64,000 nt of DNA from Octopus bimaculoides (GCF_001194135.2 NC_068993.1:23753006-23817005); one strand, 5' to 3'; numbered from the stretch's first letter, positions 4,935-50,700 are shown. Numbers and translations: made by a program. The notes: generated by a model from the sequence alone, not told the origin.

Positions 4935-6524
4935 TCCCTCGCACTCTATCAGCGAATTGGACGCACCCCTATTTTACAAGGATATTTTGCGGAGAAAAAC
5001 AAGTTTGATATGTTGTATCCTACATTTATTGAAAGATAATTTTAAGTGATCTTGTAGGGAAAACTGTATGATTCTATGTATGAAATACAATATTGTGACA
5101 GTATCCCGAAATGAACTTTGAAATCATATGTAGCTTTACAGTCACCTTTAAATGAAACAAAATTAAATTTTCTGTAGCAAAAGAAAAATATCCAATAGTA
5201 TCAATGGATCCTGGTATATGCAAACAAAAGGCAAATATACTGATAAAAACTGGTGCAAACCAATCAGTAAATTACAATAAATGTGATGAATTCCAATAGA
5301 TAATTACAGTTGCTCATTCTCATTGTTGCCATCCATATTACCAGTACTCTGTTCATCCCTGGAGTTCTCTGCAATAGGATCATGATCATCAATATTTTCT
5401 TCAAATAATAAATCGTTCTCAGTACCATCAAGAGCAATACTAATGTCATTTTTTTTAATGATTGCACAACTACTTCTTTTATAGCATTCCAAGAACTTTT
5501 TATCCACTCATTCACTTGTGTAATACTAGCCCTTTTCCTTTTTCCTGTTGGTGTCACTTTAAAATCGAAAGACTGCATCCACTTGCTCCACTCCTCCCGT
5601 AAGAATCCTCTAAATGGTTTATCGACTGAAACATCGAAAGGTTGCAACTGGCTGATTCGGCCTTCTGGAAATACAGCCAACTGGGTCTTCAGTTCTCCAA
5701 CAAGCTCGGTTCTATAATCCCGAAATGAGTCCCGAATTAATAAGGCAGGTTTCTTTAATAGCCCACCAGGACGACTGGACCACAGTTTACCAAGCTACAA
5801 TTTCATTCGTCTCTTATCCATCCAACCAACCTTTTCTATGGACATGAACATAAATGTCATTAGGTATCTTTTCTTTTGGTAAAGTCTTACTTTAAAAAGT
5901 AAAACAGGTGGATGTTTTGTGCCATCAGTGCATCATGCTATTACAACTATATAGTGTATCATTTCACGGCCACATGTTTTAACAGTCACAGATTTACCAT
6001 CATTGGATCCTATTATCTTGTTTGATGGCACATCAAATGTCAAAGAGACTTCGTCCATATTAGCTGTCTGTGAATGTTCGAAATTAGCATCTTCTCTTGA
6101 TTTAATGAAATTCCTGTAAAACTTTAGTATTTGGTATTCGTATTTAGGGACATTATTTGTGCTATTCTTTTCTTTGCCCTCATACATAGGTCATTTCTCC
6201 TCATAAATCTGGAGCACCATGATGTTGATCGTTTAAAATCATTCATATCCATGTCAATTGCTATAAGTATTGAATGGTATATAATCATTTTAGTGGATAC
6301 TGCGAAGCCTGATTTTCATTGGTCTATTCCCACGGAGGTAGTGTTTGCTACGTTTAGCAGCTTTCTGCTGCTTGCTGCTCTTCTTGTTTCCTCCAAGTCC
6401 TTACCCTTTCCTCGGTTGGTGGTGGACTAAAATACTGAGCAGCTGCTCTATTACTGTGTTCTTTTGCATATAGTACGACATCAAGTTTAGATTTGATGTT
6501 ATAACCGTTTATTTTATCAGCCAT
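4935..6524 (-). mobile_element. Degenerate pogo-superfamily transposon, POGK-like (Brinker-type DBD, CENP-B HTH, DDE_1)
   Basis: ATG at 6524 gives MADKINGYNIKSKLDVVLYAKEHSNRAAAQYFSPP (Brinker DBD-like). ORF 5933-6187 has ANMDEVSLTFDVPSN; ORF 5264-5680 has PEGRISQLQPFDVSVDKPFR...TPTGKRKRAS. A terminal-like sequence CTCTAT...GACGCACCCCTATTTT lies near 4945-4980. The ORF is disrupted. Confidence 0.85.
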
Positions 6525-11815: not shown

Positions 11816-12029
11816 CACACACGCACCCCCCCACACACACACATACACACATATATATATATATATATATAGGTGTGAGAAAGTTGGTATGTGAAAGCAC
11901 GTGGTTGAATGTCTAAAAGATAATATGAGTGAAAAAACTACAGAAGTCTTTTGTTACATGGTTAAAGTGTATATTTAAATTGTCAGAAAAATGTTATAAA
12001 ATTTTTTTGGTATATAAACATTGTATTTG

Positions 12030-13620
12030 GAGAAATAACCGGTTTCGTGTTGTCTTTTCAAATTTCACTACTTCATCGTAACATGTGTTCCCTCCCGTGT
12101 GGAAGGAAGAGTTCTAGATAGGGGGAGGTAATTAGGGATTTCTTCCGGTATAAGGGAGATAATCGAAATGTAGGAGGTGGTAGATTTTGATTAATTTACC
12201 ATGGTTTTGTTCTATATCTTTTTCCCCTCTCAGTGGGGTGATGAATTTCCTTATTAAATGTGTTAGCAATGATTAAGTTTGGGTTTGTATTTGTGAATGA
12301 AGAAGGTTTCTTTATTTAATCTAATTTGTGTTGGTGTTCTAATGGCACATTGATAGAATGGAAAGATTATAAATTGTGGTAGCATTTGTTTTGTACATTT
12401 CTCAATATGCTCACTAAATGGTATCATTCAGTATTCTGGGCATGCAATCTGCTGTCGATGCAGAGTGCATCTGCGTCTGAGCGATGATCCTGTGGACCCT
12501 ATGTAGTTTTCGTGGCAGCCCGAGCATCTTATTACATAAATAAGGTTTTCTGATGCACAAGTAAAGTCAGATTTAACTTTGAATTTTTGTCCCTCTTTGA
12601 AGAGGCACTCTGAACCTTCTAGAATGTTTGGGCATGTTGCGTAATTTGGGCAACCACATTTTTTTACTTTTGCATCTGTTATTTGGAAAATAATTTTGCC
12701 TTTGTGAGGATCTTTTTCAGTGATTTAGGTTTTTTGTACCTTTTAATGATTTTGTGTGTGTGTAAAATCTCCTTCAATTTGGGGTCCTTATGTAGCATTG
12801 GTATGTTTTGGGTGATGATGGTGAAGGCTTCTTTGTTTCTGGGGTTGTATGTGGATATGTACGGTAGTATTTTCGGGGAATGTGTGTTGCTGTGTTTAAC
12901 TTTTCTTAAGTTTTCTATGTTAATTTGTGATGCACGTCTGATTCCTTCCTCTATGAGTTGAACTGGGTAGTGTCTGTCAATTAGTGTGTTTTTGAGTTCT
13001 TGTAGTCTGTAGTATCTAGTATTTTCTTCTGACACTATTGTGCATATTCTTCTTGCAAGGTTGAAGGGGATGTTTGTCTTGGTGTGAATCNNNNNNNNNN
13101 NNNNNNNNNNNNNNNNNNNNNNNNNNNNNNNNNNNNNNNNNNNNNNNNNNNNNNNNNNNNNNNNNNNNNNNNNNNNNNNNNNNNNNNNNNNNNNNNNNNN
13201 NNNNNNATGAATTCAACCGATTTAGTAATGAATTCTTTACTGATCCTGTTTGGGATTTCTTTCGGGAATTGATCCAGCCAGAATTGAATTGCCTGAAGTC
13301 CATAATTATGAGGTATACTGGTGTATAAATTAATCACGTCAAATGAAACCATGATTGTTTCTTCCTTGACTTTCTTTGGGAGGTGATTTAACATATCCAA
13401 GTCATCTCTGATATAGCTATTGATGTGTTTAAGGAAGGGTTTTAGGAGGATGTCCATAAATAGACTTAGTCTGTGTGTTTCACAGGCTGGGCCAGCTATG
13501 ATGGGTCGCAGTTTTAGGTCCCCCGGGTTTGGTGTATGTATGTATGTCTTTGGTGATTTTTTAATATGGGGTAGAACCGCCTTTGGCAGTAATTACAGCT
13601 TAATTTCTATGAGGTATGGA
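12030..13620 (-). mobile_element. Penelope-like element: RT (split by an N gap), linker and GIY-YIG endonuclease, with 3' pLTR-like end
   Basis: LRPIIAGPACETHRLS.FMDILLKP and SFDVINLYTSIP (PLE RT motifs). After the gap: HTKTNIPFNLARRICTIVSEENTR, YKKPKSLKKILTKAK, and DFTCASENLIYVIRCSGCHENYIGSTG (GIY-YIG, about 12490-12560). A few frameshifts and stops. Confidence 0.92.
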
Positions 13621-13624
13621 CTCG

Positions 13625-14232
13625 TACAAAGTTCTTGGAGTCATGATGGTGGAGGATATCGAATCCTTACTTGTTTTTCTAAAGTGCACCATAAATGTTC
13701 AGTAATATTAAGATCTGGGGACTGTGGTAGCCAGATAAAAATGTTCAACTAGAATGTTCCTTGTGCCATTCAGGAGTCGATATCCTGAATGGCACAAGCT
13801 GTAGTTTTTTCAGCTGAGTTCCTGAACTCTCTACAACCATCAGGGTTGCTACCTAACCACTTAACACTTACAAAGGAGGTCCAATCATGCTGCTCAGGAT
13901 AATAGTGCACCAATTCGTACAGCTAAACTTTAGCTGTACGAATTAGTGCACTATCATCCTGAAAGATTGCATTTGCCACCGGAAACAGTTCTGCAAACAG
14001 GATGAATTCGATCAGATAAAATGTTTAGTGTTCATTATAAATCTGCCATGAAGGGATACGATTGGGCTGGCAGATTTCCACCCCCAGAACATTGCAGATC
14101 CTCCTCCATGTTTAACAGTTGGAAGAAGGCAGTCTGAGTCAAATGCTTCTTTTGTTTGTCTCCGCATGTATACTCGGCCGGTGGTCGGAAATAAGGCAAA
14201 GGATGACTCGTCCGAGAAAATAACATTTTTCC
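13625..14232 (-). mobile_element. Tc1 (DD34E) transposase fragment interrupted by a templated insertion
   Basis: VIFSDES at 14205-14224, PTVKHGGGS, FQDDSALIRTAK ending at 13929, then after the insertion PEWHKEHSS...IWLPQSPDLNITEHLW (13690-13735). Confidence 0.88.
13799..13893 (+). repeat. Local copy of about 95 bp of the Helitron helicase sequence at 14428-14523
   Basis: CTGTAGTTTT.TCAGCTGAGTTCCTGAACTCTCTACA.CCATCAGGGTTGCTAC.TAACC...CCAATCATGCTGCT is present at both positions with only a few mismatches. Confidence 0.9.
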
Positions 14233-14239
14233 ACTGTTC

Positions 14240-15248
14240 TAGAGACCAATTCTGTAGGTTTTTACTTCAATCTAAATGCTTGGTAACAATCAATGGCTCT
14301 GTGAGTGAGCCATCTTAGATCCACGTAATGATGCTATCCACAAAAGCAACTGGGATCCCTTGCAGCTGTTGCCCGGACAAGAACAGTCATTCAAATCCCT
14401 CGACACTGTCATTGATCAGGACCAGACTGTAGTTTTGTCAGCTGAGTTCCTGAACTCTCTACAGCCATCAGGGTTGCTACTTAACCGCTTCACACTTACA
14501 AAGAGAGCCCAATCATGCTGCTGAGGAATTTGGATCCTCCTCATCTGTACAATTGAACCAGACTGGTGGTGAAAGCCATGCGACCCCATGTCCTAGAGGC
14601 AACAATTATGAGTGGGAACTATAAGGGTGTCGATGTCTTCATTCATCGAATCCCGTTGATCCCATATGACCTCTTCTTTGAATTTAAACGGTTCCAGTTC
14701 TCAGTGAAAGTACGTTTCGCACTGTCAATAAGCAAGCCTCAAGGACAGACTCTCAAGGTTAATGGACTTCACCTTTGTTTCTCTCATGGGCGATTACATG
14801 TAGAATCTTCGCGAGTTGGAAGTCCCCAATATCATTTCGTTTATGCAACAATTAAAGGACACACTCAAATCACCGTATATTTAGAAGCTCTAAATAATTT
14901 AACTGTGATTGATTTTCGGATTTGTTTCAACACATATGTTTATACTCACGCCATCTGATAGATTTTTTGTTAAATGTACTTATTAACAGGAGGGGAGCGC
15001 CCGCAGGCTGTTCTTCTCAAGTTTATGTATTTTCAGGTTTAACGTGTTTCAAATACTGACAATTGAAAGTGATTGCAGACAAAGAACAACCTAGTTTTTA
15101 ACAATTTTAACAGTGAGAATATCGGATAAAGCATGTTATTGGCATTAATAGTTTGTGCCTCAACTAATTAGTGTTGAGAACTGCATAATCCATGTAAGTT
15201 TCATTATTTTCAATAACCAGCGAAACATAAAGTTGGTATCTCAGCTAG
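14240..15248 (+). mobile_element. Helitron 3' portion (PIF1-type helicase C-terminus, subterminal hairpin, CTAG)
   Basis: EFLNSLQPSG...PIMLLRNLDPPHL..TRL; ORF 14566-14958 RIPLIPYDLFFEFKRFQFSVKVRFALSISKPQGQTL...CFSHGRLHVESSRVG. Hairpin ACCAGC/GTTGGT at 15216-15237 is followed by CTAG at 15245-15248 and then T. Confidence 0.88.
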
Positions 15249-20724: not shown

Positions 20725-21590
20725 AAGGTTGTATTAAAATGCACCCGGACTACTTTTGTAGCGCGCCAACAGATGACACCACAACAGATGATTGCGTGCA
20801 CAATGAGAGCTAGTGATCTTCCCAAGACTGTGCCGAGTGACATCGCTGTGCTTACTTCGCAAATTGTTAAATTTGTGTTTTTGTGATTATATCTATGCTG
20901 TAGTCGGCGATTTTATCATGAACAGGAACAAACAGACAACGTAAAATTTTGCGTGAAACAAGGGAAGTCTGATATAAACACATTGAGAATGCTTTGGCAA
21001 GTTTACTGCGACGAGGTAATGGGTCATATGCAAGGTTTCGAGTGGCGCGGGCGCTTCAGAAGCGGAAGAATGTCCCTGGAAGATGCAGAGTTATCTGGAA
21101 GAACTACCACGAACGTCATGTATTGTGCACCAAGAACTCGTCCCTCAGAGCCAGGTCGTCACTTGAGAGTTCTACTGCGACACTTTGAAGCGTTTGGTGG
21201 AGGACATTCGGAGAAAGTGCCTGGGGCTTAGGAGCGCGAAGAATAGGATTCTTCACGACGACATTGAACCCTGTCACCGAGCTCTCCTCACACGCAAGTT
21301 TCTCGCCAAAACAACATGGTGTCTCTTCCGCACCCGCCCTATTCGTCAGATTTTGCACCAGGGGACTTCCATCTTTTCCCCAAGATCAAAATACAGTTCA
21401 AAGGTCACCGATTTAACAACGTTGTCGAGATCTAGAGTGAATCGCAGACGGTCCCGGAATGCTTACGGAAAACGGCATCCAGGGCGGTTTCCAAAGGTGA
21501 CCGGGACGCTGGGACCGGTGTATTGCTGAACAAGGTGATTAATTCGAAGGAGATGATATAAAAACGTAGGTAAATAGGTTTTTTGGTTTT
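20725..21590 (+). mobile_element. Internally deleted mariner element
   Basis: NVKFCVKQGKS..NTLRML.QVY.DE...FEWRGRFRSGRMSLEDAELSGR (HTH) joins directly to EFYCDTLKRLVEDIRRK...ILHDDIEPCH...LPHPPYSSDFAPGDFHLFPKIK...RWDRCIAEQGD. The first catalytic D region is deleted. Confidence 0.88.
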
Positions 21591-33679: not shown

Positions 33680-34290
33680 TCTCATCTATGTCGTCCAATA
33701 GGACGCCCCAAAATTATTTCCACACGTCTTCTCCATTCATCTTGATCTTCAGTAAAGGTCCTCAGCTCCTGTGCCCCATTCATAACAGTACCCTCCAGCA
33801 TGTTGTCGATATAGGTGGTCTTTCTCCTTCCCACCCTTGGTTCTTCCTTCTGTTGGTTGTCAGAGCACTAGCCTGTTAGCAATTTCATCGAAGTGTCTAA
33901 TGCAGTGACCAGCTAACCTCATCCTTCAATGCTGTGTTTTCAATGTTACTTTTGGTAGGCCCTGGTATAAGTCGGCGCTTGTATGACTCTTCCGGGAGAC
34001 ATTGAGTTCCATTCTAAGCATCCTCACATAACAACTGTCCAACTGCTTCTTCAATGTTTTGGTGAGCGTCCATGTTTCAACCCCGAATAGAATAATAGAT
34101 TCCACTGTTGCCAGAAACTAACTCACTTTCAATTTCCTTGCTAACTTTGAACACCATACCTTTCTCAATTTATGCCTTGCGCTCCAGGCAAGAGCTTTCC
34201 TTGCTACGATGTCTCTTTCAGAACTTTGTCTCCACGCACCAAGGTATTTGAAATGTTCAACTCCTTGAGCGACTTACCGAAGCATTTCGT
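33680..34290 (-). mobile_element. RTE-clade LINE 3' segment (thumb to C-terminus) of a 5'-inverted insertion
   Basis: Reverse complement: GKSLKE..HFKYLGAWRQSSERDIVARKALAWSA...FLATVESIILFGVETWTLTKTLKKQLDSCYVRMLRM...RMRLAGHCIRH...GRPIGRHR*. Confidence 0.9.
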
Positions 34291-34304
34291 GGTTGAATAC
34301 TTGC

Positions 34305-34869
34305 AGTTCTGTTTTAACCGAATAAAACATAAGATCGACAAACAATTGCAACCAAATCAAAATGGATTCAGATCAGGATGGTCAACATCTCACATTGTTG
34401 CACTTAGAAGACTGATAGAGGGAGTTAAGAGCCATAACAGGAAAACTATCATTATCTATGTAGACTTTAAAAAGGCGTTTTATTCAGTACATAGAGAAAT
34501 GATGATAAAGATACTTAAAGCATATGATATTCCACCAAGAATTTTGAGAGCAAAAAGTAAGCTGTATAATAACAATAGAACGAAAGTGATCACTCCTGAT
34601 GGAGAGACGGAATACTTTGAAGTCAAAGCCGGAGTATTACAATGCGATACTCTAGCAGCCTATCTCTTCGCCATCGTTCTGGACTATGTAATGTGTAGAA
34701 GTACGAGGGCAAGGAAGAACTGGGATGCAAACTGCATAGGCAAAGAAATAAACCGCATCAAGCAGTAAATTACCTACACTATGCTGATGACCTGGCATTA
34801 CTAACAGAGCAGACAGATCAGGCACAGGAGGTGCTGAGCAGATTAGAGCAGCAATCGGGGAAGGTAGGA
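34305..34869 (+). mobile_element. Inverted upstream RT-core segment of the same RTE insertion
   Basis: NRIKHKIDKQLQPNQNGFRSG, YVDFKKAFYSVHR, AGVLQCDTLAAYLF, YADD at 34780-34791, ending ...QSGKVG. The whole insertion is flanked by TTGTATAATAAA at 33668-33679 and 34870-34881. Confidence 0.9.
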
Positions 34870-35074: not shown

Positions 35075-36710
35075 ATCCTCCTTAGCATCGCTTTGCTGAC
35101 GAAGATTAGGAAGGCTGTTCTCCACGTCGTCTACACACACGCTCGTGGCTGATAAGGCCGATGTAGGATCAACATATACGATTACATTGATGACAGGGGT
35201 AGGGTTGTCAGGGTCTGATGATGCAGCTGCATTATGTTTTCATATCTGACATTTTTCTTCAGGAGAGGCACTGCGACAAATCTCAAAGGAGGAAACAACA
35301 TCGCTGATGGTATGGTGCCAAACGATGCGGTCTGCTGTAGAGTGGATCACTCACGATAATCAATGTATGTCACAAACTCTGTCGCGGTGGCCAATGGTGA
35401 GCTCACCGTACATGATGATCTTGGATAGGCGGTGGTCTTTCATCCTATCAACGTGCCCTGCCCAATGTAAAATAGCCCTGATGTAAAATAGCTTCCAGAC
35501 TGATGACCTTTGCTCGCTGGAGGACCTCAGTATTACTGATGTAATCGCTCCAGTAAATGTTAAGGATGGTATGGAGCAGCGTTGGTGTAAAACCTTCAAG
35601 GAGCCTGAAATGACAGGACATAGAGCCATATATGAGCGTCGTGAGAACGACCACACTGTAGGCGCTAACTTTTGTGCTGATCTAAATGCTGCTAATTGTT
35701 CCACACACGCTTGTACAGTGTGCCAAATAATTTGTTTGCCATTGCAAGTCTGTTGTCAATTTCTTTGCTGATACTGGCTTCTAATGAGATGTTACATCCA
35801 AGATAAGTGAACTGCTCTACCGACTTCCGTTCTGTCTCAACAATGGTGATGTGGGTCGGGCTGTGCTCTTCCTGAGGAGCTGGTTGTTGTAGGACTTAAG
35901 TCTTTTTCAAGCTTACTTCCAGCCTGAAGAGCTGGGCGGCCTCTGCGACAAGTGAAGCATTATCTGAAAAGAATAATTCCTGGATCAGTTGCTCTTGAGT
36001 TTTTGTGTGGGCTTGTAGGCGTCGGGTTTGAAAAGGCTGCCATCTAGACGGTACCTGATGTAGACACCGTCTGCAGCGTTGAATTTTGCAGTGGCCTGCT
36101 TGAGCATCATGCTGAAAAAGATGCTTAAGAGAGTTGGTGGCATCCTGCTTCACGCCGTTTTTGATGGGGAATGGCTCAGATATGTTGCTATTCAGGCGGA
36201 CTTGTCTTTGTTGGTCTTCATGAAGCTGGATGATTATCGTTAGGAATTTTGGGGGACAGTTTAGGATCTTCCACAGACCTTTCCTGCTCACAGTTTTGAG
36301 CGCTTTTGCCAGATCGACAAATGTTACATAAAGTGGTTTGATTTGCTTCTAGCACTTTTCTTGGAGCTGCTTGAGAACGAAAATCATATCTGCTGTGCCC
36401 CTGATACTACATTGGCTTTCTGAAAGATGATTTTCGGCGATGGACAGAACAAGTCTGTTAAGGAGTAATCTTGTTAGAACTTGTCCTGCAGTAGAAAGCC
36501 GGGTGGAATCCCAGGTAATTTGAGCAGTCTGACTGTCTCCTTTATATTTTCTTTTCCTACAGTGTAATGATGACAGCATCCCGGAGATCTTGTGGCAGCT
36601 TCTCTGTTCCCAGCACACGAGGAACTCGTGGGGTTTAACACGCAGGACAGGACCCCCATGCTTCCATATCTCATGTGGCATTCCATCGACTCTTGCTGCC
36701 TTTCTATACT
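35075..36710 (-). mobile_element. 5'-truncated RTE (BovB-like) LINE, decayed
   Basis: LLLNRLV..IAENHLSESQC, ADMIFVLKQLQEKC, FVDLAKA..TVSRKGLWKIL, NGVKQ, LHWAGHVDRMKDHRLSK, and a C-terminal IGLISHERVC followed by a short 3' UTR TCTTCGTCAGCAAAGCGATGC. Confidence 0.88.
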
Positions 36711-43293: not shown

Positions 43294-43787
43294 GTAGAGG
43301 TAGATATGTATGCATATGTATATGCATGTGTATATCTATGCATTTGTATATGCATATCTGAGTATATNNNNNNNNNNNNNNNNNNNNNNNNNNNNNNNNN
43401 NNNNNNNNNNNNNNNNNNNNNNNNNNNNNNNNNNNNNNNNNNNNNNNNNNNNNNNNNNNNNNNNNNNNNNNNNNNNNNNNNNNNNNNNNNNNNNNNNNNN
43501 NNNNNNNNNNNNNNNNNNNNNNNNNNNNNNNNNNNNNNNNNNNNNNNNNNNNNNNNNNNNNNNNNNNNNNNNNNNNNNNNNNNNNNNNNNNNNNNNNNNN
43601 NNNNNNNNNNNNNNNNNNNNNNNNNNNNNNNNNNNNNNNNNNNNNNNNNNNNNNNNNNNNNNNNNNNNNNNNNNNNNNNNNNNNNNNNNNNNNNNNNNNN
43701 NNNNNNNNNNNNNNNNNNNNNNNNNNNNNNNNNNNNNNNNNNNNNNNNNNNNNNNNNNNNNNNNNNNNNNNNNNNNNNNNNNNNNNN

Positions 43788-43933
43788 GTATAAAAATACC
43801 ATAAACAATTATAAAAAAAAAATAGAGGAGAAAAAGATGCTGAATCAAAATTAGATTTAATAAAATCTAATTTTAATTTTGATTCAACATCTTTTTCTCT
43901 ATTTTTCTATAATTGTTTATGGTATTTTTATAC
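43788..43933. repeat. AT-rich palindrome of about 146 bp starting at a gap edge
   Basis: Perfect 26-bp outer arms (43788-43813 and 43908-43933), with imperfect inner arms including AAAATTAGATTT/AAATCTAATTTT. Confidence 0.9.
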
Positions 43934-47716: not shown

Positions 47717-50700
47717 TACATACATGATGGCTGTCCACTCGTGACCGAGGAAGTCTATTGCTGACATTTAAGAACATTGTGCCTACTAGGACGAACTTAT
47801 ATTTTGAATCTGAGGCTCCGTTGGTGGCTAAAGTGCCCTGCTCTTGAAAAGAATACACGACTGCAAACATTGCAAGCCAAGATTTTCCCATTCACTACGC
47901 TAGTAGTGTGCTTTCAAGTAACACGCTTAAATGTTTCATGAAGAATACGTACTTTTTCAAAGGTGTTGCCCCCACTCCTTAACCTGCTTCCTCCTTCTGT
48001 GACGGTGATAGGTATTGCTCTCCCAATCGGTCTCCTGCATATCACAGGCCTTTAATGAGGACTTGACACTTTCCTTAAATCGCGGCCTTACCTTAGTTTC
48101 CTGCCGGGGTCTCTATCCACTAACAAGTTCCCCTATAGCATCTGTTTAGGGATCCTGCTATCCTTCACGTAACTGGTGTTTGTGCACCATCGCCTCATTA
48201 CGCCAGATATCAGCTTTCCTCAAGACTTGTGTGTCTGGAGTTTTTACGGTCTAGCCAACATTCAGAATGTGTCTCAGACATCTCTGATGGAAGAGTTCAG
48301 TGTCCTTTACATGAGTAAGCGAGCGATGTCAGTACGCATGCATAGTGCACAGCAATTTTTGTTTGCCATGTAATGCCATTGTGGGACCAGACACGAGACT
48401 CAAGAGACCGGAAGGAATCGATTGCACTCTGCAGCCTGAAAGATATTTCATCATCCAGGAAGCAAGAACGGCTGAGTGTGCTTCCCAGGTAGACAAACTT
48501 GTCTACCACTTGCAGTGTTGTTCCTTCAACCAAGGTAGCTGGTTCAACATATGGATATCCTGGTACAGACTGGAACATTACAACAGTCTTATCCAGGCTA
48601 ATGCTGAGTCCAAATGCCTTCCAAGAAGCAGAAATACGATTCATAACTATTTGCATTTTATCCATCATATGAGTGACTAAGTCACAGTCATCTGCATAAA
48701 GGAGGTCAAGAATAATAAGAGACTCGAAAACTTTTGAATTGGCAGCAAATCGGCGGAGATTAAAGAGGCGCCCAGCAGATCGATACTTGACATTTTCTCA
48801 GAGAGCTAACATTAGCAAAAGCATGAGTAAAAGCAGTAGCAAAGTACAAAGAAAAGAAAGTTGGGGCAAGTATGTCACCCTGATTGAGACCATTCTCTTT
48901 AGGAATGGGTCCCGCCATGCCACTACCAACAGTGACCTAAGCCTCCATTCCGTCATGAAATGATTTAATTATAGATACAAGATGATCCGGACATCCAAGT
49001 TTACCAAGTATTTTCCGTAGCAAGGCCCTATTCGCAGTATCAAAGGCCTTGGTTAGCTCAATGAATACCTGGATAAGATCTATATTCTGCTCATAGGATT
49101 TCCTCTGCATCTGTTTTGCTGTGAAAATCATATCTATTGTCCTTCTTCCAAATCGGAAGCTACATTGAGATTCAGATAGGACATCATTTACGAGACACCC
49201 ATTCAGACGGGTAAGAAGAATATTTGCCAGAACCTTGCCAGCAGTAGATAGTAGAGCAATACCTCTGTAGTTAACACACATTATTCTGGTTCCTTTTCCT
49301 TTATAGAGAGGAAGGATAATTGTATCCTTCCAGCCCTTAGGGCATTGCGCCAGACTACACTGATAAGTTCCTGAAGGGACTGTATGATGTAATAACCACC
49401 AAATCGCAAAACCACAGCACAAATTCTATCCTTTCCAGGTGCCCTACCAATATTCAATTTACTTATTGCTATCGTTACCTAAGGAATCAATGATAGGTCT
49501 TTGTTGCATAGTATCAATCACTGTTTCATCCACAATTGACTCGTAGTTTAGGTGTTCAAAGAAGTAGTGCATCCAGTGACTTGTGATTTCTTTTGAATTG
49601 GTAAGTACAGTAGAAGATTCATTGGAAAGCAAAGGAGGTGATACATAGATTTTAGGCCCATAGACATACTTCATAAGATGGTAAACATTCTTGCTGTCAT
49701 ATCCATCAACAGCAGCCTGAACATCACGCGCAAGATCCTCCCACCAAGTGTTCTGCATCTTCATAAGAGATCACTGCAGTAGTGATTTTACACTGCTATA
49801 GTGAGCAAGTGCTAGATTTTACTGCACAGCTGAAAGTCCTCTATGCAGCAATACATTGTGGGCATATGCGCTTCACAACTAATAGTCGCTGAACGTCAGC
49901 ATCATTTTCATCAAACCTCTCTCTGTGTCAAGCAGTAGCATATCCCAGTGTTTCAGCAGCACATTGAAGAACCACATTGAAGATTTCGAAAATTTTCCCA
50001 TATTGTAGTATTTGCAATGCTGCACAGGCGAGTCTAAAGCTGTTTCCTCAACACAGCATCATACATCTTGTGGACATTCAGACGCCGAGGAATGTCAACT
50101 GGCCCTCTTCTTTTTCACTCTAATCCGGAACTTTGCTCGCACCAGACTGTGGTCTGTCCAGCATTCCGATACATGAAAGGACTTGACGTTATAAATGTCA
50201 TAGCTCTCACGCTTGCGGATGATGACATAATCCAGCAAGTGACGAACTTTAGACCTTGGATGCATCGATGTTGTTGTGGGATCACTTTTGTCCATAAAAT
50301 GACTGCTTGCAACGTAGAGTCCATGTTCATCGCAAAGCTCAAGCAGCATAATAGCATTGCTATTAATTTTCCCTACAGAATTGCTAGAGAATTCCATGTT
50401 TCTTCGTTTGTTCCAACCCTATCATTGAAATCCAGGTAGAATGACTTTATCAGAACTGGGTATTGTCTTAAATATGGCTCTCAGATGGGTATAAAATATT
50501 GTTTTATCTTCATCACAACTATTCAAAGTAGGTGCGTATGCACTTATTAGAGTAGCAAATCTCCCACCTTTCAGGTGCAGTCGTAATCATTAGACGTTCA
50601 TTTAGAGGAACAGAAAACTGCTCAAACTTCTTAAGGATATCAGATCAAACTGCAAGCCAACACTAGACTCTATTCGCTCCTCATTCAGTTTCCTCTTTCA

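What the first reader, a model, noticed from the sequence alone, without database searches (positions are those of the whole stretch)
13760..13962. Fossil multi-template-switch repair scar: two fold-backs bracketing a copied Helitron segment inside a Tc1
The Tc1 frame (...FQDDSALIRTAK / PEWHKEHSS...) is split by about 150 bp built entirely from local sequence. First, a 34-bp inverted copy of the Tc1 flank forms a palindrome at 13894-13962 (2 mismatches, centred on 13928). Second, about 95 bp is copied from the Helitron at 14428-14523. Third, an inverted copy of the other flank forms a perfect 16-bp-stem hairpin at 13760-13798. Junctions show microhomology (GCTGCT-C/G-AGGA; CTG). This matches templated insertion by polymerase theta end joining or FoSTeS/MMBIR, and it implies the Helitron was already adjacent when the break was repaired.
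Basis: partly seen in the sequence, partly recalled or inferred. Interest (0 to 1): 0.7.

Follow-up and report, generated by a model that had tools for sequence, protein, structure and literature searches.

The report
Fossil templated-insertion repair scar in transposon debris
A dead Tc1/mariner transposon carries a 145-base patch stitched from two inverted copies of its own flanks and a copy of a neighbouring Helitron: a clear but functionless old example of a known kind of error-prone break repair.

Summary
In a decayed Tc1/mariner transposase remnant (minus strand), the reading frame FQDDSALIRTAK | (V)STPEWHKEHSS is split by 145 nt (13783-13927). Every base of that patch has a local template:
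- A' (13783-13798) is a perfect inverted copy of 13760-13775.
- X (13799-13899) is a 90% direct copy of Helitron helicase codons at 14427-14527.
- B' (13894-13927) is a 32/34 inverted copy of 13929-13962.

Cutting out the 145 nt restores the frame. The copies are old: each palindrome arm has one derived change, and X and its source differ at 10 sites. That rules out an assembly or library artefact. X and the adjacent Helitron share 7 substitutions and a 1-nt deletion that three Octopus bimaculoides copies lack, which supports copying in cis.

The best reading is one germline break repaired by serial, microhomology-primed template switches, of the SD-MMEJ / polymerase-theta type. A replication-based template switch cannot be excluded. 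This mechanism class is well documented, and the locus is neutral transposon debris in a gap-rich draft assembly, probably from an octopod. It is a good specimen of low novelty. Read support and population or ortholog data could not be checked.

The parts
13561..13782 (-). Tc1/mariner (DD36E-type) transposase remnant, C-terminal part (about aa 266-343 of 343-aa homologues), with frameshifts and stops
   Evidence: tblastn of P0004; alignment A1; translations
13653..13667 (+). Candidate template for the hairpin spacer: AGGATATCGAATCCT, whose reverse complement matches 13772-13786 at 14/15 positions (10 nt exact: 13777-13786 vs 13653-13662). Tentative.
   Evidence: the repeat finder I7; exact-match decomposition
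13760..13775 (+). Arm A: original Tc1 flank (codes EWHK on the minus strand) and template of fold-back 1
13776..13782 (+). 7-nt spacer GTCGATA. It is either original Tc1 sequence (codons V-S-T on the minus strand) or a short tract copied in inverted orientation from 13653-13663.
   Evidence: homologues have one codon fewer here
13783..13798 (+). A': perfect 16-nt inverted copy of 13760-13775 (fold-back 1). Its last 4 nt, CAAG, overlap the Helitron-derived tract.
13799..13899 (+). X: 101-nt direct copy (90%) of Helitron helicase codons at 14427-14527 (Pif1 2B domain, ...VVFSAEFLNSLQPSGLLPNHLTL..GGPIMLLR). The match to the family consensus starts at 13795.
13894..13927 (+). B': 34-nt inverted copy of 13929-13962 (fold-back 2; 32/34). 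Its first 6 nt, TCAGGA, overlap the end of X. It keeps the ancestral CCA (Pro) codon that arm B has since lost.
13928..13928 (+). Single central base (C) of the palindrome. It may be the first base of the original Val codon (GTN on the minus strand).
13929..13962 (+). Arm B: original Tc1 flank (codes FQDDSALIRTAK on the minus strand) and template of fold-back 2
13929..14288 (-). Tc1/mariner transposase remnant, middle part (about aa 125-265). The 5' third of the element is missing.
14281..14288 (.). Abrupt Tc1|Helitron junction lying on a 6-nt microhomology (GCAACA in family representatives of both elements)
   Evidence: alignment A4; blastn end points
14285..15141 (+). 5'-truncated Helitron fragment: Pif1-like helicase C-terminal ~200 codons plus 3' non-coding sequence; 76-80% DNA identity to three O. 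bimaculoides Helitron copies
14427..14527 (+). H: inferred template of X, 628 nt downstream in the same orientation

Best explanation
This is a neutral, fossil scar of one germline double-strand break inside an already dead Tc1/mariner copy. The break was repaired by synthesis-dependent microhomology-mediated end joining, the SD-MMEJ / polymerase-theta (TMEJ) type. The break lay between the codons for ...RTAK and (V)STPEW, that is between 13782 and 13928/13929.

Inferred order of events:
1. The left 3' tail snapped back on itself and copied 13775->13760, making A'. It was primed by AGGA/TCCT if the 7-nt spacer was first copied from 13653-13663.
2. The new 3' end ...GGCACAAG annealed through CAAG to the resected right-hand tail about 500 nt inside it. 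There it copied about 100 nt of the adjacent Helitron (X), then dissociated.
3. The right 3' tail snapped back and copied its own last 34 nt (B').
4. The two nascent ends annealed through the 6-nt microhomology TCAGGA/TCCTGA that synthesis had created. Fill-in and ligation followed.

The net result is +145 nt with at most about 4 nt lost. The patch has since decayed by about 4% per copy.

Shown: the anatomy, the templates, the overlaps, the age and the sister relation of X and H. Inferred: a single event, the order of steps, a two-ended break, and the polymerase. The broader claim is one event of serial, microhomology-primed template switching by whatever polymerase; I rate that at about 0.85. 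The specific DSB/SD-MMEJ version I rate at 0.6.
For: - Every base of 13783-13927 has a local template.
- Two tracts are reverse complements of the immediately adjoining flanks. This is the configuration defined as snap-back synthesis (PMC5068794 S7 legend; PMC5728401).
- Tract boundaries overlap by 4 nt (CAAG; 6 of 8 with GGACCAAG) and 6 nt (TCAGGA) once the Helitron consensus is used for the ancestral state. The chance of >=4 nt is 0.016 and of >=6 nt is 0.0013 per junction.
- Flank loss is nil to about 4 nt, and excision restores the frame.
- The two fold-backs are two of only three such hairpins in 64 kb, and they sit exactly at the two edges of X.
- Divergence of the three tracts is compatible with one age: 2/50 vs 10/101, Fisher p = 0.34.
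- X and H share 7 substitutions and a 1-nt deletion against three outgroup copies.
- Germline TMEJ with templated inserts at transposon- and nuclease-induced breaks, and the same signature in natural variation, are documented in C. elegans (PMC4490562; PMC4032859).
Against: - The 101-nt tract and the 145-nt total are long compared with the templated inserts described for TMEJ. About half of those are under 5 bp and the deletions are about 7-13 bp.
- The right-hand palindrome has a 1-nt centre. An intramolecular hairpin cannot prime it unless a few bases (GTT) were already present or were added first.
- The left-hand hairpin has no primer pairing unless the tentative spacer template is accepted (10-nt exact match, roughly p 0.01-0.1).
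- X retains more ancestral states than H (6 H-derived vs 3 X-derived; not significant, p = 0.5). Only three outgroup copies were available, so copying from another member of the same Helitron subfamily is not excluded.
- There are no reads, no second individual and no orthologous empty site.
Confidence: 0.6

Rival explanations
1. Replication-based serial template switching (FoSTeS/MMBIR, or a multi-step version of the short template-switch mutations of the four-point model). A stalled or collapsed fork's nascent strand switched to the complementary strand twice and to a site 628 nt ahead once, with no two-ended break.
For: It predicts the same anatomy: microhomology at each switch, inverted copies adjoining their templates, and all templates within about 630 nt. 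Template switching in replication is documented to create perfect hairpins in one event (PMC5453318, PMC8794818, PMC7954356). An intermolecular template (complementary or sister strand) explains the 1-nt palindrome centre more easily than an intramolecular hairpin does. The 101-nt tract is less unusual for a replicative polymerase.
Against: The short-range four-point model covers reverse-complement replacement only, so it does not cover the direct copy X. Two fold-backs of opposite flanks meeting in the middle mirror the symmetry of two broken ends. The final TCAGGA overlap looks like annealing of two separately extended ends. No copy-number gain of a larger segment is seen.
Confidence: 0.25
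2. Several independent mutations at different times: first an insertion of a Helitron-derived filler, then later separate template-switch events that created each hairpin.
For: The inverted-repeat arms look slightly younger (2/50 differences) than X/H (10/101). Inverted repeats can also be homogenised by later template switching or conversion.
Against: The difference is not significant (Fisher p = 0.34). Two later events would have had to land exactly on the two edges of X and share 4- and 6-nt overlaps with it. Hairpins of this size are otherwise almost absent from the window.
Confidence: 0.07
3. Assembly or library artefact: a chimeric join in a gap-rich short-read assembly, or a fold-back read artefact.
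For: The window is a draft scaffold with 10 N gaps, the nearest at 13091-13206. No read data could be consulted. Exact look-ups of four ORFs of the locus found no independent assembly.
Against: Artefacts copy present-day sequence exactly, whereas every copy here has diverged from its template. B' keeps the ancestral Pro codon CCA where B now has CTA, and B keeps GAT where B' has AAT. X keeps 6 ancestral states that H has lost, and H keeps 3 that X has lost. The longest exact matches between copies are 26 nt (X/H) and 16 nt (both inverted repeats). That is short for a de Bruijn mis-join (inference; the assembler's k is unknown).
Confidence: 0.03
4. The patch is a small mobile element (MITE or foldback-like), or the remnant of a second Helitron that inserted into the Tc1.
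For: It contains transposon-derived sequence and hairpins.
Against: Its two ends are copies of the local target flanks, not of each other, so it has no TIRs. There is no target-site duplication (left GTCGATA, right CTTTAGC). There is no other copy in the window, in L001-L003 or in the metagenome scan. X is an internal 101-nt piece of a helicase ORF without Helitron termini.
Confidence: 0.02

Closest known systems
Templated insertions ('delins') of polymerase-theta-mediated end joining / SD-MMEJ: snap-back, loop-out and trans synthesis (C. elegans, Drosophila, mammalian cells; PMC4490562, PMC5068794, PMC5728401, PMC2943611, PMC4912351)
   Same: The inserted DNA is copied from sequence next to the break. 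Reverse-complement copies of the break's own flank match snap-back synthesis. A direct copy from the other end matches trans synthesis. It also shows several rounds of abortive synthesis, short microhomology at each re-annealing, a final join through a microhomology created by the synthesis, and little flank loss.
   Different: It is much longer than usual (tracts of 16, 34 and about 100 nt; 145 nt in all). It has fold-backs at both ends of one break. The template lies about 500 nt from the break. It is a natural scar, roughly 8% diverged between copies, not an experimental product. POLQ dependence is untestable here.
FoSTeS / MMBIR complex rearrangement junctions
   Same: Serial microhomology-mediated template switches produce a mosaic of direct and inverted copies of nearby sequence.
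   Different: The scale is tens of nucleotides rather than kilobases. There is no larger duplication or triplication. The symmetry of the two fold-backs suggests two ends rather than one invading end.
Short template-switch mutations, four-point model (PMC5453318, PMC7954356); hairpin birth by template switching (PMC8794818)
   Same: One-step creation of perfect or near-perfect inverted repeats next to their template, found as fossils by comparing sequences.
   Different: Those events replace or insert one reverse-complement tract. Here two such tracts are coupled to a 101-nt direct copy from 628 nt away.
Filler DNA / long P-nucleotide-like palindromes at transposon excision sites and hairpin-opened ends (recalled from general knowledge, not tested)
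   Same: Palindromic duplication of flanking sequence at a repaired break, sometimes with filler copied from nearby.
   Different: There is no TSD or terminal remnant of an excised element. The left inverted repeat has a 7-nt spacer and the right one has an odd (1-nt) centre, unlike exact hairpin-opening products.

Membership tests
TMEJ / SD-MMEJ templated-insertion scar | Inserted sequence matches sequence close to the junction | tested here: met
   All of 13783-13927 is covered by templates 8-628 nt away
TMEJ / SD-MMEJ templated-insertion scar | Snap-back tracts: reverse complement of the same-side flank | tested here: met
   A' (16/16) and B' (32/34) adjoin their templates; definition in PMC5068794 and PMC5728401
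TMEJ / SD-MMEJ templated-insertion scar | Microhomology (>=1 nt) at each priming or re-annealing step | tested here: inconclusive
   CAAG and TCAGGA at the two X junctions, using the family consensus for the ancestral Helitron state. The primer pairing of the two fold-backs is unclear: AGGA/TCCT applies only if the spacer is templated, and the palindrome centre is 1 nt.
TMEJ / SD-MMEJ templated-insertion scar | Small flank deletion | tested here: met
   Excision restores frame; the site is one codon longer than in homologues, so 0 to about 4 nt were lost
TMEJ / SD-MMEJ templated-insertion scar | Typical insert size (mostly a few to tens of nt) | tested here: not met
   145 nt with a 101-nt tract, against mostly small inserts in C. 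elegans data. It is atypically long, so membership is by mechanism-likeness only.
TMEJ / SD-MMEJ templated-insertion scar | Dependence on POLQ | not testable with these tools
   Needs genetics in the source organism
FoSTeS / MMBIR | Several template switches with microhomology, mixing direct and inverted copies | tested here: met
FoSTeS / MMBIR | Replication-fork origin (one-ended break) | not testable with these tools
   Sequence alone does not discriminate
Short template-switch mutation (four-point model) | Single reverse-complement tract copied from nearby sequence | tested here: not met
   It holds for A' and B' individually, but X is a direct copy 628 nt away and there are three tracts
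Tc1/mariner transposon | DDE_3-type transposase homology | tested here: met
   478 homologues; best E 5.5e-73 at 60% identity to 343-aa PF01498+PF13358 proteins. The Pfam DDE_3 hit on the decayed translation is below cut-off (19.4 vs 28.6 bits).
Tc1/mariner transposon | Catalytic D, D, E and their spacing | tested here: met
   SDES, FQDD and DLNITE motifs are present. Homologues are DD36E; the repaired window copy gives 37. So it belongs to the Tc1/mariner superfamily, not to DD34E Tc1 in the strict sense.
Tc1/mariner transposon | Terminal inverted repeats and TA target duplication | not tested
   The 5' third is missing (the junction with the Helitron is at 14285-14288) and the 3' end was not delimited
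Helitron | Pif1-family helicase | tested here: met
   Pif1_2B_dom hit is just below cut-off (22.6 vs 23.9 bits). 175 homologues, best E 1e-67, including O. bimaculoides PIF1-like proteins.
Helitron | Rep / Helitron_like_N domain | tested here: inconclusive
   Absent from the window (5'-truncated). Present in the related copy L002 just upstream of the homologous helicase part (PF14214, E 3.2e-27).
Helitron | 5'-TC ... CTRR-3' termini with a 3' hairpin | not tested
   Homology to L002 ends at 15141 and to L001/L003 at 14974; the termini were not examined
microRNA precursor (Rfam families) | Score at or above the family gathering threshold | tested here: not met
   Best 41.7 bits vs 83. Unrelated plant and animal miRNA models hit on both strands, which is a generic hairpin effect.
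MITE / foldback mobile element | TIRs related to each other, a TSD, and multiple copies | tested here: not met

The most novel reading that the evidence does not exclude
The one-step birth of a 34-bp near-perfect hairpin (13894-13962) and a 16-bp hairpin (13760-13798), both made of transposase coding sequence, created a hairpin-RNA locus. If transcribed, it would yield small RNAs antisense to this DD36E Tc1/mariner family. That would be a de novo transposon-silencing or miRNA-like gene born from break repair, in a lineage (probably octopods) where, from my own recollection and not checked here, many new miRNAs have been reported. Nothing here shows transcription or processing. The tiny loop is unlike canonical pre-miRNAs, and Rfam gives only generic sub-threshold hits.
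Probability: 0.03. Interest if true: 0.55.

Novelty: new member of a known kind. Interest (0 to 1): 0.25.

Why it matters
It is an unusually legible natural specimen. Every base of a 145-nt patch can be traced to a template, and the patch contains two opposed fold-backs and a long trans copy. Because the copies froze ancestral states of both transposons, they date the event relative to the Tc1 and Helitron insertions.

If such multi-round, long-tract templated insertions turned out to be frequent in this genome, they would bear on how cephalopod germlines repair breaks and on how hairpins arise de novo. On its own it is a single neutral scar in transposon debris. It confirms known mechanisms rather than extending them.

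Tried and rejected
- Independent assemblies of the locus. Exact-product look-ups of four ORFs (47, 130, 37 and 31 aa; three of them span patch junctions) found nothing on record. The Helitron protein search found no near-identical protein either (best 62% over the full query). I therefore did not spend the third protein search on a junction query.
- Metagenome scan for the A'/X junction 22-mer: 0 hits. The public DNA collections on hand hold no animal genomes, so 'unique in the genome' could not be tested.
- An uninterrupted same-family Tc1 to read the original break-site nucleotides. The only same-family copy found (L001, 82% DNA identity) stops at aa ~218, short of the break. The closest proteins are only 60-65% identical, so only the codon count (3 vs 4) could be compared.
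- The idea that the Tc1 protein homology runs to 14311. Rejected: DNA homology to the L001 Tc1 stops at 14288 and Helitron homology starts at 14285.
- A 14-nt exact inverted match of the start of X at 11930-11943. Its flanks are unrelated and it contains a T-run, so it is chance.
- The GATATC palindrome in the spacer as a strand-switch point. It is out of register with the observed hairpin by 5 nt (reasoned).
- Rfam: only generic sub-threshold miRNA-like hits.
- Hairpin-opening (P-nucleotide) origin. The 7-nt spacer and the odd centre do not fit, and there is no TSD of an excised element.

Full report
**1. What is in the sequence**

The window is a gap-rich draft scaffold with 10 runs of N; the nearest to the locus is 13091-13206. 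It has about 35% G+C and is packed with transposon debris.

On the minus strand, 13561-14288 encodes a decayed Tc1/mariner transposase with several frameshifts and stops. A search with its conceptual translation found 478 homologues. The best are 343-aa proteins with PF01498 + PF13358 at 60-65% identity.

On the plus strand, 14285-15141 encodes the C-terminal ~200 codons of a Pif1-like helicase. Several of its closest named relatives are Octopus bimaculoides proteins. Three O. bimaculoides loci (L001-L003, assembly GCA_001194135.2) are 76-80% identical to it at the DNA level. One of them, L002, has a Helitron_like_N Rep domain just upstream (PF14214, E 3.2e-27). The family is therefore a true Helitron, of which the window keeps only a 5'-truncated piece. 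The source is probably an octopod; the species was not established.

**2.

The repeat finder and blastn give the following:
- A direct repeat 13799-13899 / 14427-14527: 101 nt, 90.1%, E 3e-34.
- A palindrome 13894-13927 / 13929-13962: 34-nt arms, 2 mismatches, one central base.
- A perfect 16-nt hairpin 13760-13775 / 13783-13798 with a 7-nt spacer.

A window-wide scan found only three tight hairpins with arms of 16 nt or more in 64 kb. Two are these and they sit at the two edges of the Helitron-derived tract. The region folds at z = -11 relative to shuffles.

Homologous transposases read FQDDNAPIHTA[KR]-[IVF]-V-[KTS]-EWHEEHS without interruption. The window reads FQDDSALIRTAK, then the patch, then (V)STPEWHKEHSS. 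Deleting exactly 13783-13927 (145 nt) restores one frame. An exact-match decomposition shows that every base of the 145 nt has a local template:
- A' (16 nt) is the inverse of 13760-13775.
- X (about 101 nt) is a direct copy of 14427-14527.
- B' (34 nt) is the inverse of 13929-13962.
- X and B' overlap by 6 nt.

**3. It is old, so it is not an artefact**

The two palindrome mismatches are one derived change on each arm. B' keeps CCA (Pro, the family consensus APIHTA) where B now has CTA. B keeps GAT (Asp) where B' has AAT.

Over the 95-nt core (13799-13893), X and H differ at 9 sites. Polarised against the three O. bimaculoides copies, 6 are changes in H and 3 are changes in X. The tenth difference of the full 101-nt repeat lies in the junction overlap at 13895.

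Library or assembly artefacts would copy present-day sequence exactly. The longest exact matches between copies are only 26 nt and 16 nt.

The three tracts are compatible with one age: 2/50 vs 10/101 differences, Fisher p = 0.34. The pooled Jukes-Cantor distance is 0.084, about 4% per copy. With an assumed neutral rate of about 1-3e-9 per site per year, that is on the order of 10^7 years. This date is an inference because the rate is not known.

**4. Where X came from**

X and H share 7 substitutions and a 1-nt deletion that all three outgroup copies lack, and they are each other's closest relatives (90.5% vs 80-86%). H lies 628 nt away in the same orientation. This supports copying in cis from the already adjacent Helitron. 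With only three outgroups, another member of the same subfamily cannot be excluded as the template.

**5. Junctions**

Compared with the Helitron consensus (GACCAAGCTGTAG), similarity of the patch begins at 13795. The end of A' (...GGCACAAG) and the start of the Helitron tract therefore share CAAG, or 6 of 8 with GGACCAAG. Present-day H has mutated here to CAGA.

At the other edge, the end of X and the start of B' share TCAGGA. The ancestral Helitron state is inferred as CTCAGGAA, and H now reads TGAGGA. Under a random-junction model, overlaps of >=4 and >=6 nt have probabilities of 0.016 and 0.0013.

The 7-nt spacer is ambiguous:
- If it is original Tc1 sequence, the site is one codon longer than in all homologues (DD37E vs DD36E).
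- Alternatively, 13777-13786 is a 10-nt exact inverted match of 13653-13662 (14/15 over 13772-13786). That would be a further short snap-back tract flanked by the AGGA/TCCT primer pair. This is suggestive only.

**6. Mechanism**

The anatomy matches the SD-MMEJ / TMEJ scheme described in the literature. In that scheme, 3' tails at a break undergo rounds of short synthesis. Synthesis can run in cis by snap-back, which gives reverse-complement inserts of the tail's own flank. It can also run in trans on the other end, which gives direct inserts. The ends finally anneal through a microhomology that synthesis created (PMC5728401, PMC5068794, PMC4912351, PMC2943611). Germline use of this pathway at transposon- and nuclease-induced breaks, and the same signature in natural indels, are documented for C. 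elegans (PMC4490562, PMC4032859).

My model is as follows:
1. The left tail snaps back and makes A'.
2. It anneals via CAAG to the resected right tail about 500 nt inside it, copies about 100 nt (X), and dissociates.
3. The right tail snaps back and makes B'.
4. The two ends anneal through TCAGGA/TCCTGA.

All steps are inferred from the product.

The model has three weak points. The tracts are long for TMEJ. The 1-nt palindrome centre cannot be primed by a simple intramolecular hairpin. What caused the break is unknown: there is no TSD or terminal remnant of an excised element.

A replication-based template switch (FoSTeS/MMBIR, or multi-step template-switch mutation; PMC5453318, PMC7954356, PMC8794818) explains the same product. 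It handles the palindrome centre and the tract length rather better, but it handles the two-ended symmetry less well.

My ratings:
- Single-event serial template switching of any kind: about 0.85.
- DSB / SD-MMEJ version: 0.6.
- Replication version: 0.25.
- Several separate events: 0.07.
- Artefact: 0.03.
- Mobile unit: 0.02.

**7. Surroundings**

The Tc1 and the Helitron meet abruptly at 14281-14288, and both are truncated there. Family representatives of both elements read GCAACA at that point (CTTTGCAACA vs CTTTAGCAACA). This junction is therefore also of the microhomology type, probably an earlier MMEJ deletion or join. It must predate the patch if X was copied in cis. To the left, the Tc1 3' end abuts a retroelement remnant (an RT-like ORF at 13035-13457 that spans an N gap).

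**8. Comparison, novelty and verdict**

The patch works like a TMEJ/SD-MMEJ templated insertion, and most defining features are met. The typical size is not met and POLQ dependence is untestable. I therefore file it as a new, unusually elaborate natural instance of a known mutational class, not as a proven POLQ product.

It is not a mobile element and not a known RNA family; Rfam gives only generic sub-threshold hairpin hits. No function is indicated. It is a neutral scar in dead transposons.

The interest, however, is modest (0.25). What could not be done is read-level validation, a genome-wide uniqueness test, the Helitron subfamily phylogeny, and ortholog or population comparison. These are listed as next steps.

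Noticed in passing
window 14281-14288: The Tc1|Helitron junction, with both elements truncated, sits on a 6-nt microhomology. GCAACA is present at that position in family representatives of both elements (L001 Tc1: CTTTGCAACATTTG; Helitron copies: CTTTAGCAACAGTCAATGG). This is a second microhomology-type junction 360 nt from the scar.
   Followed up: partly
window 13653-13667 vs 13772-13786: A 14/15 inverted match (10 nt exact) between a Tc1 segment 105 nt upstream and the hairpin spacer plus its AGGA/TCCT shoulders. It is a possible fourth templated tract; significance is marginal.
   Followed up: partly
window 43788-43933: A 146-nt palindrome (arms about 82% complementary; core 32-nt arms with an 8-nt loop) directly abutting the N gap 43368-43787. 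It is single-copy in the window and its origin is unknown.
   Followed up: partly
L002 2569-2931 (O. bimaculoides CM046601.1): A Helitron_like_N Rep domain (PF14214, E 3e-27) lies immediately upstream of the helicase C-terminal part. That copy therefore seems to have lost most of the helicase N-terminal region by internal deletion.
   Followed up: no
L001 265-902: A copy of the same Tc1/mariner family (82% DNA identity to window 14038-14288) lies about 2 kb from a Helitron copy in O. bimaculoides as well. Its orientation relative to the Helitron is the opposite of the window's, and it is truncated next to an N gap. This is not the same arrangement.
   Followed up: partly
window 12679-13457 (minus strand): Reverse-transcriptase-like ORFs (…FDVINLYTSIPH…) span the N gap 13091-13206 and abut the Tc1 3' end. 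There was no Pfam hit at E <= 0.01 for the 83-aa piece tested.
   Followed up: no
window, whole: The window is a transposon mosaic: a pogo-like DDE ORF at 5264-5680, a mariner-like ORF at 21185-21529, and LINE-type RT ORFs at 34172-34768, 35360-36681 and 48297-49422. These labels are from reading the ORF translations, not from a domain search. (TA)n/(CA)n-type microsatellites sit at most N-gap edges.
   Followed up: no
window 13894-13962: Rfam E-value mode reports sub-threshold matches to about ten unrelated miRNA-precursor models on both strands (best 41.7 bits vs a gathering score of 83). This is a generic effect of a long perfect hairpin.
   Followed up: yes
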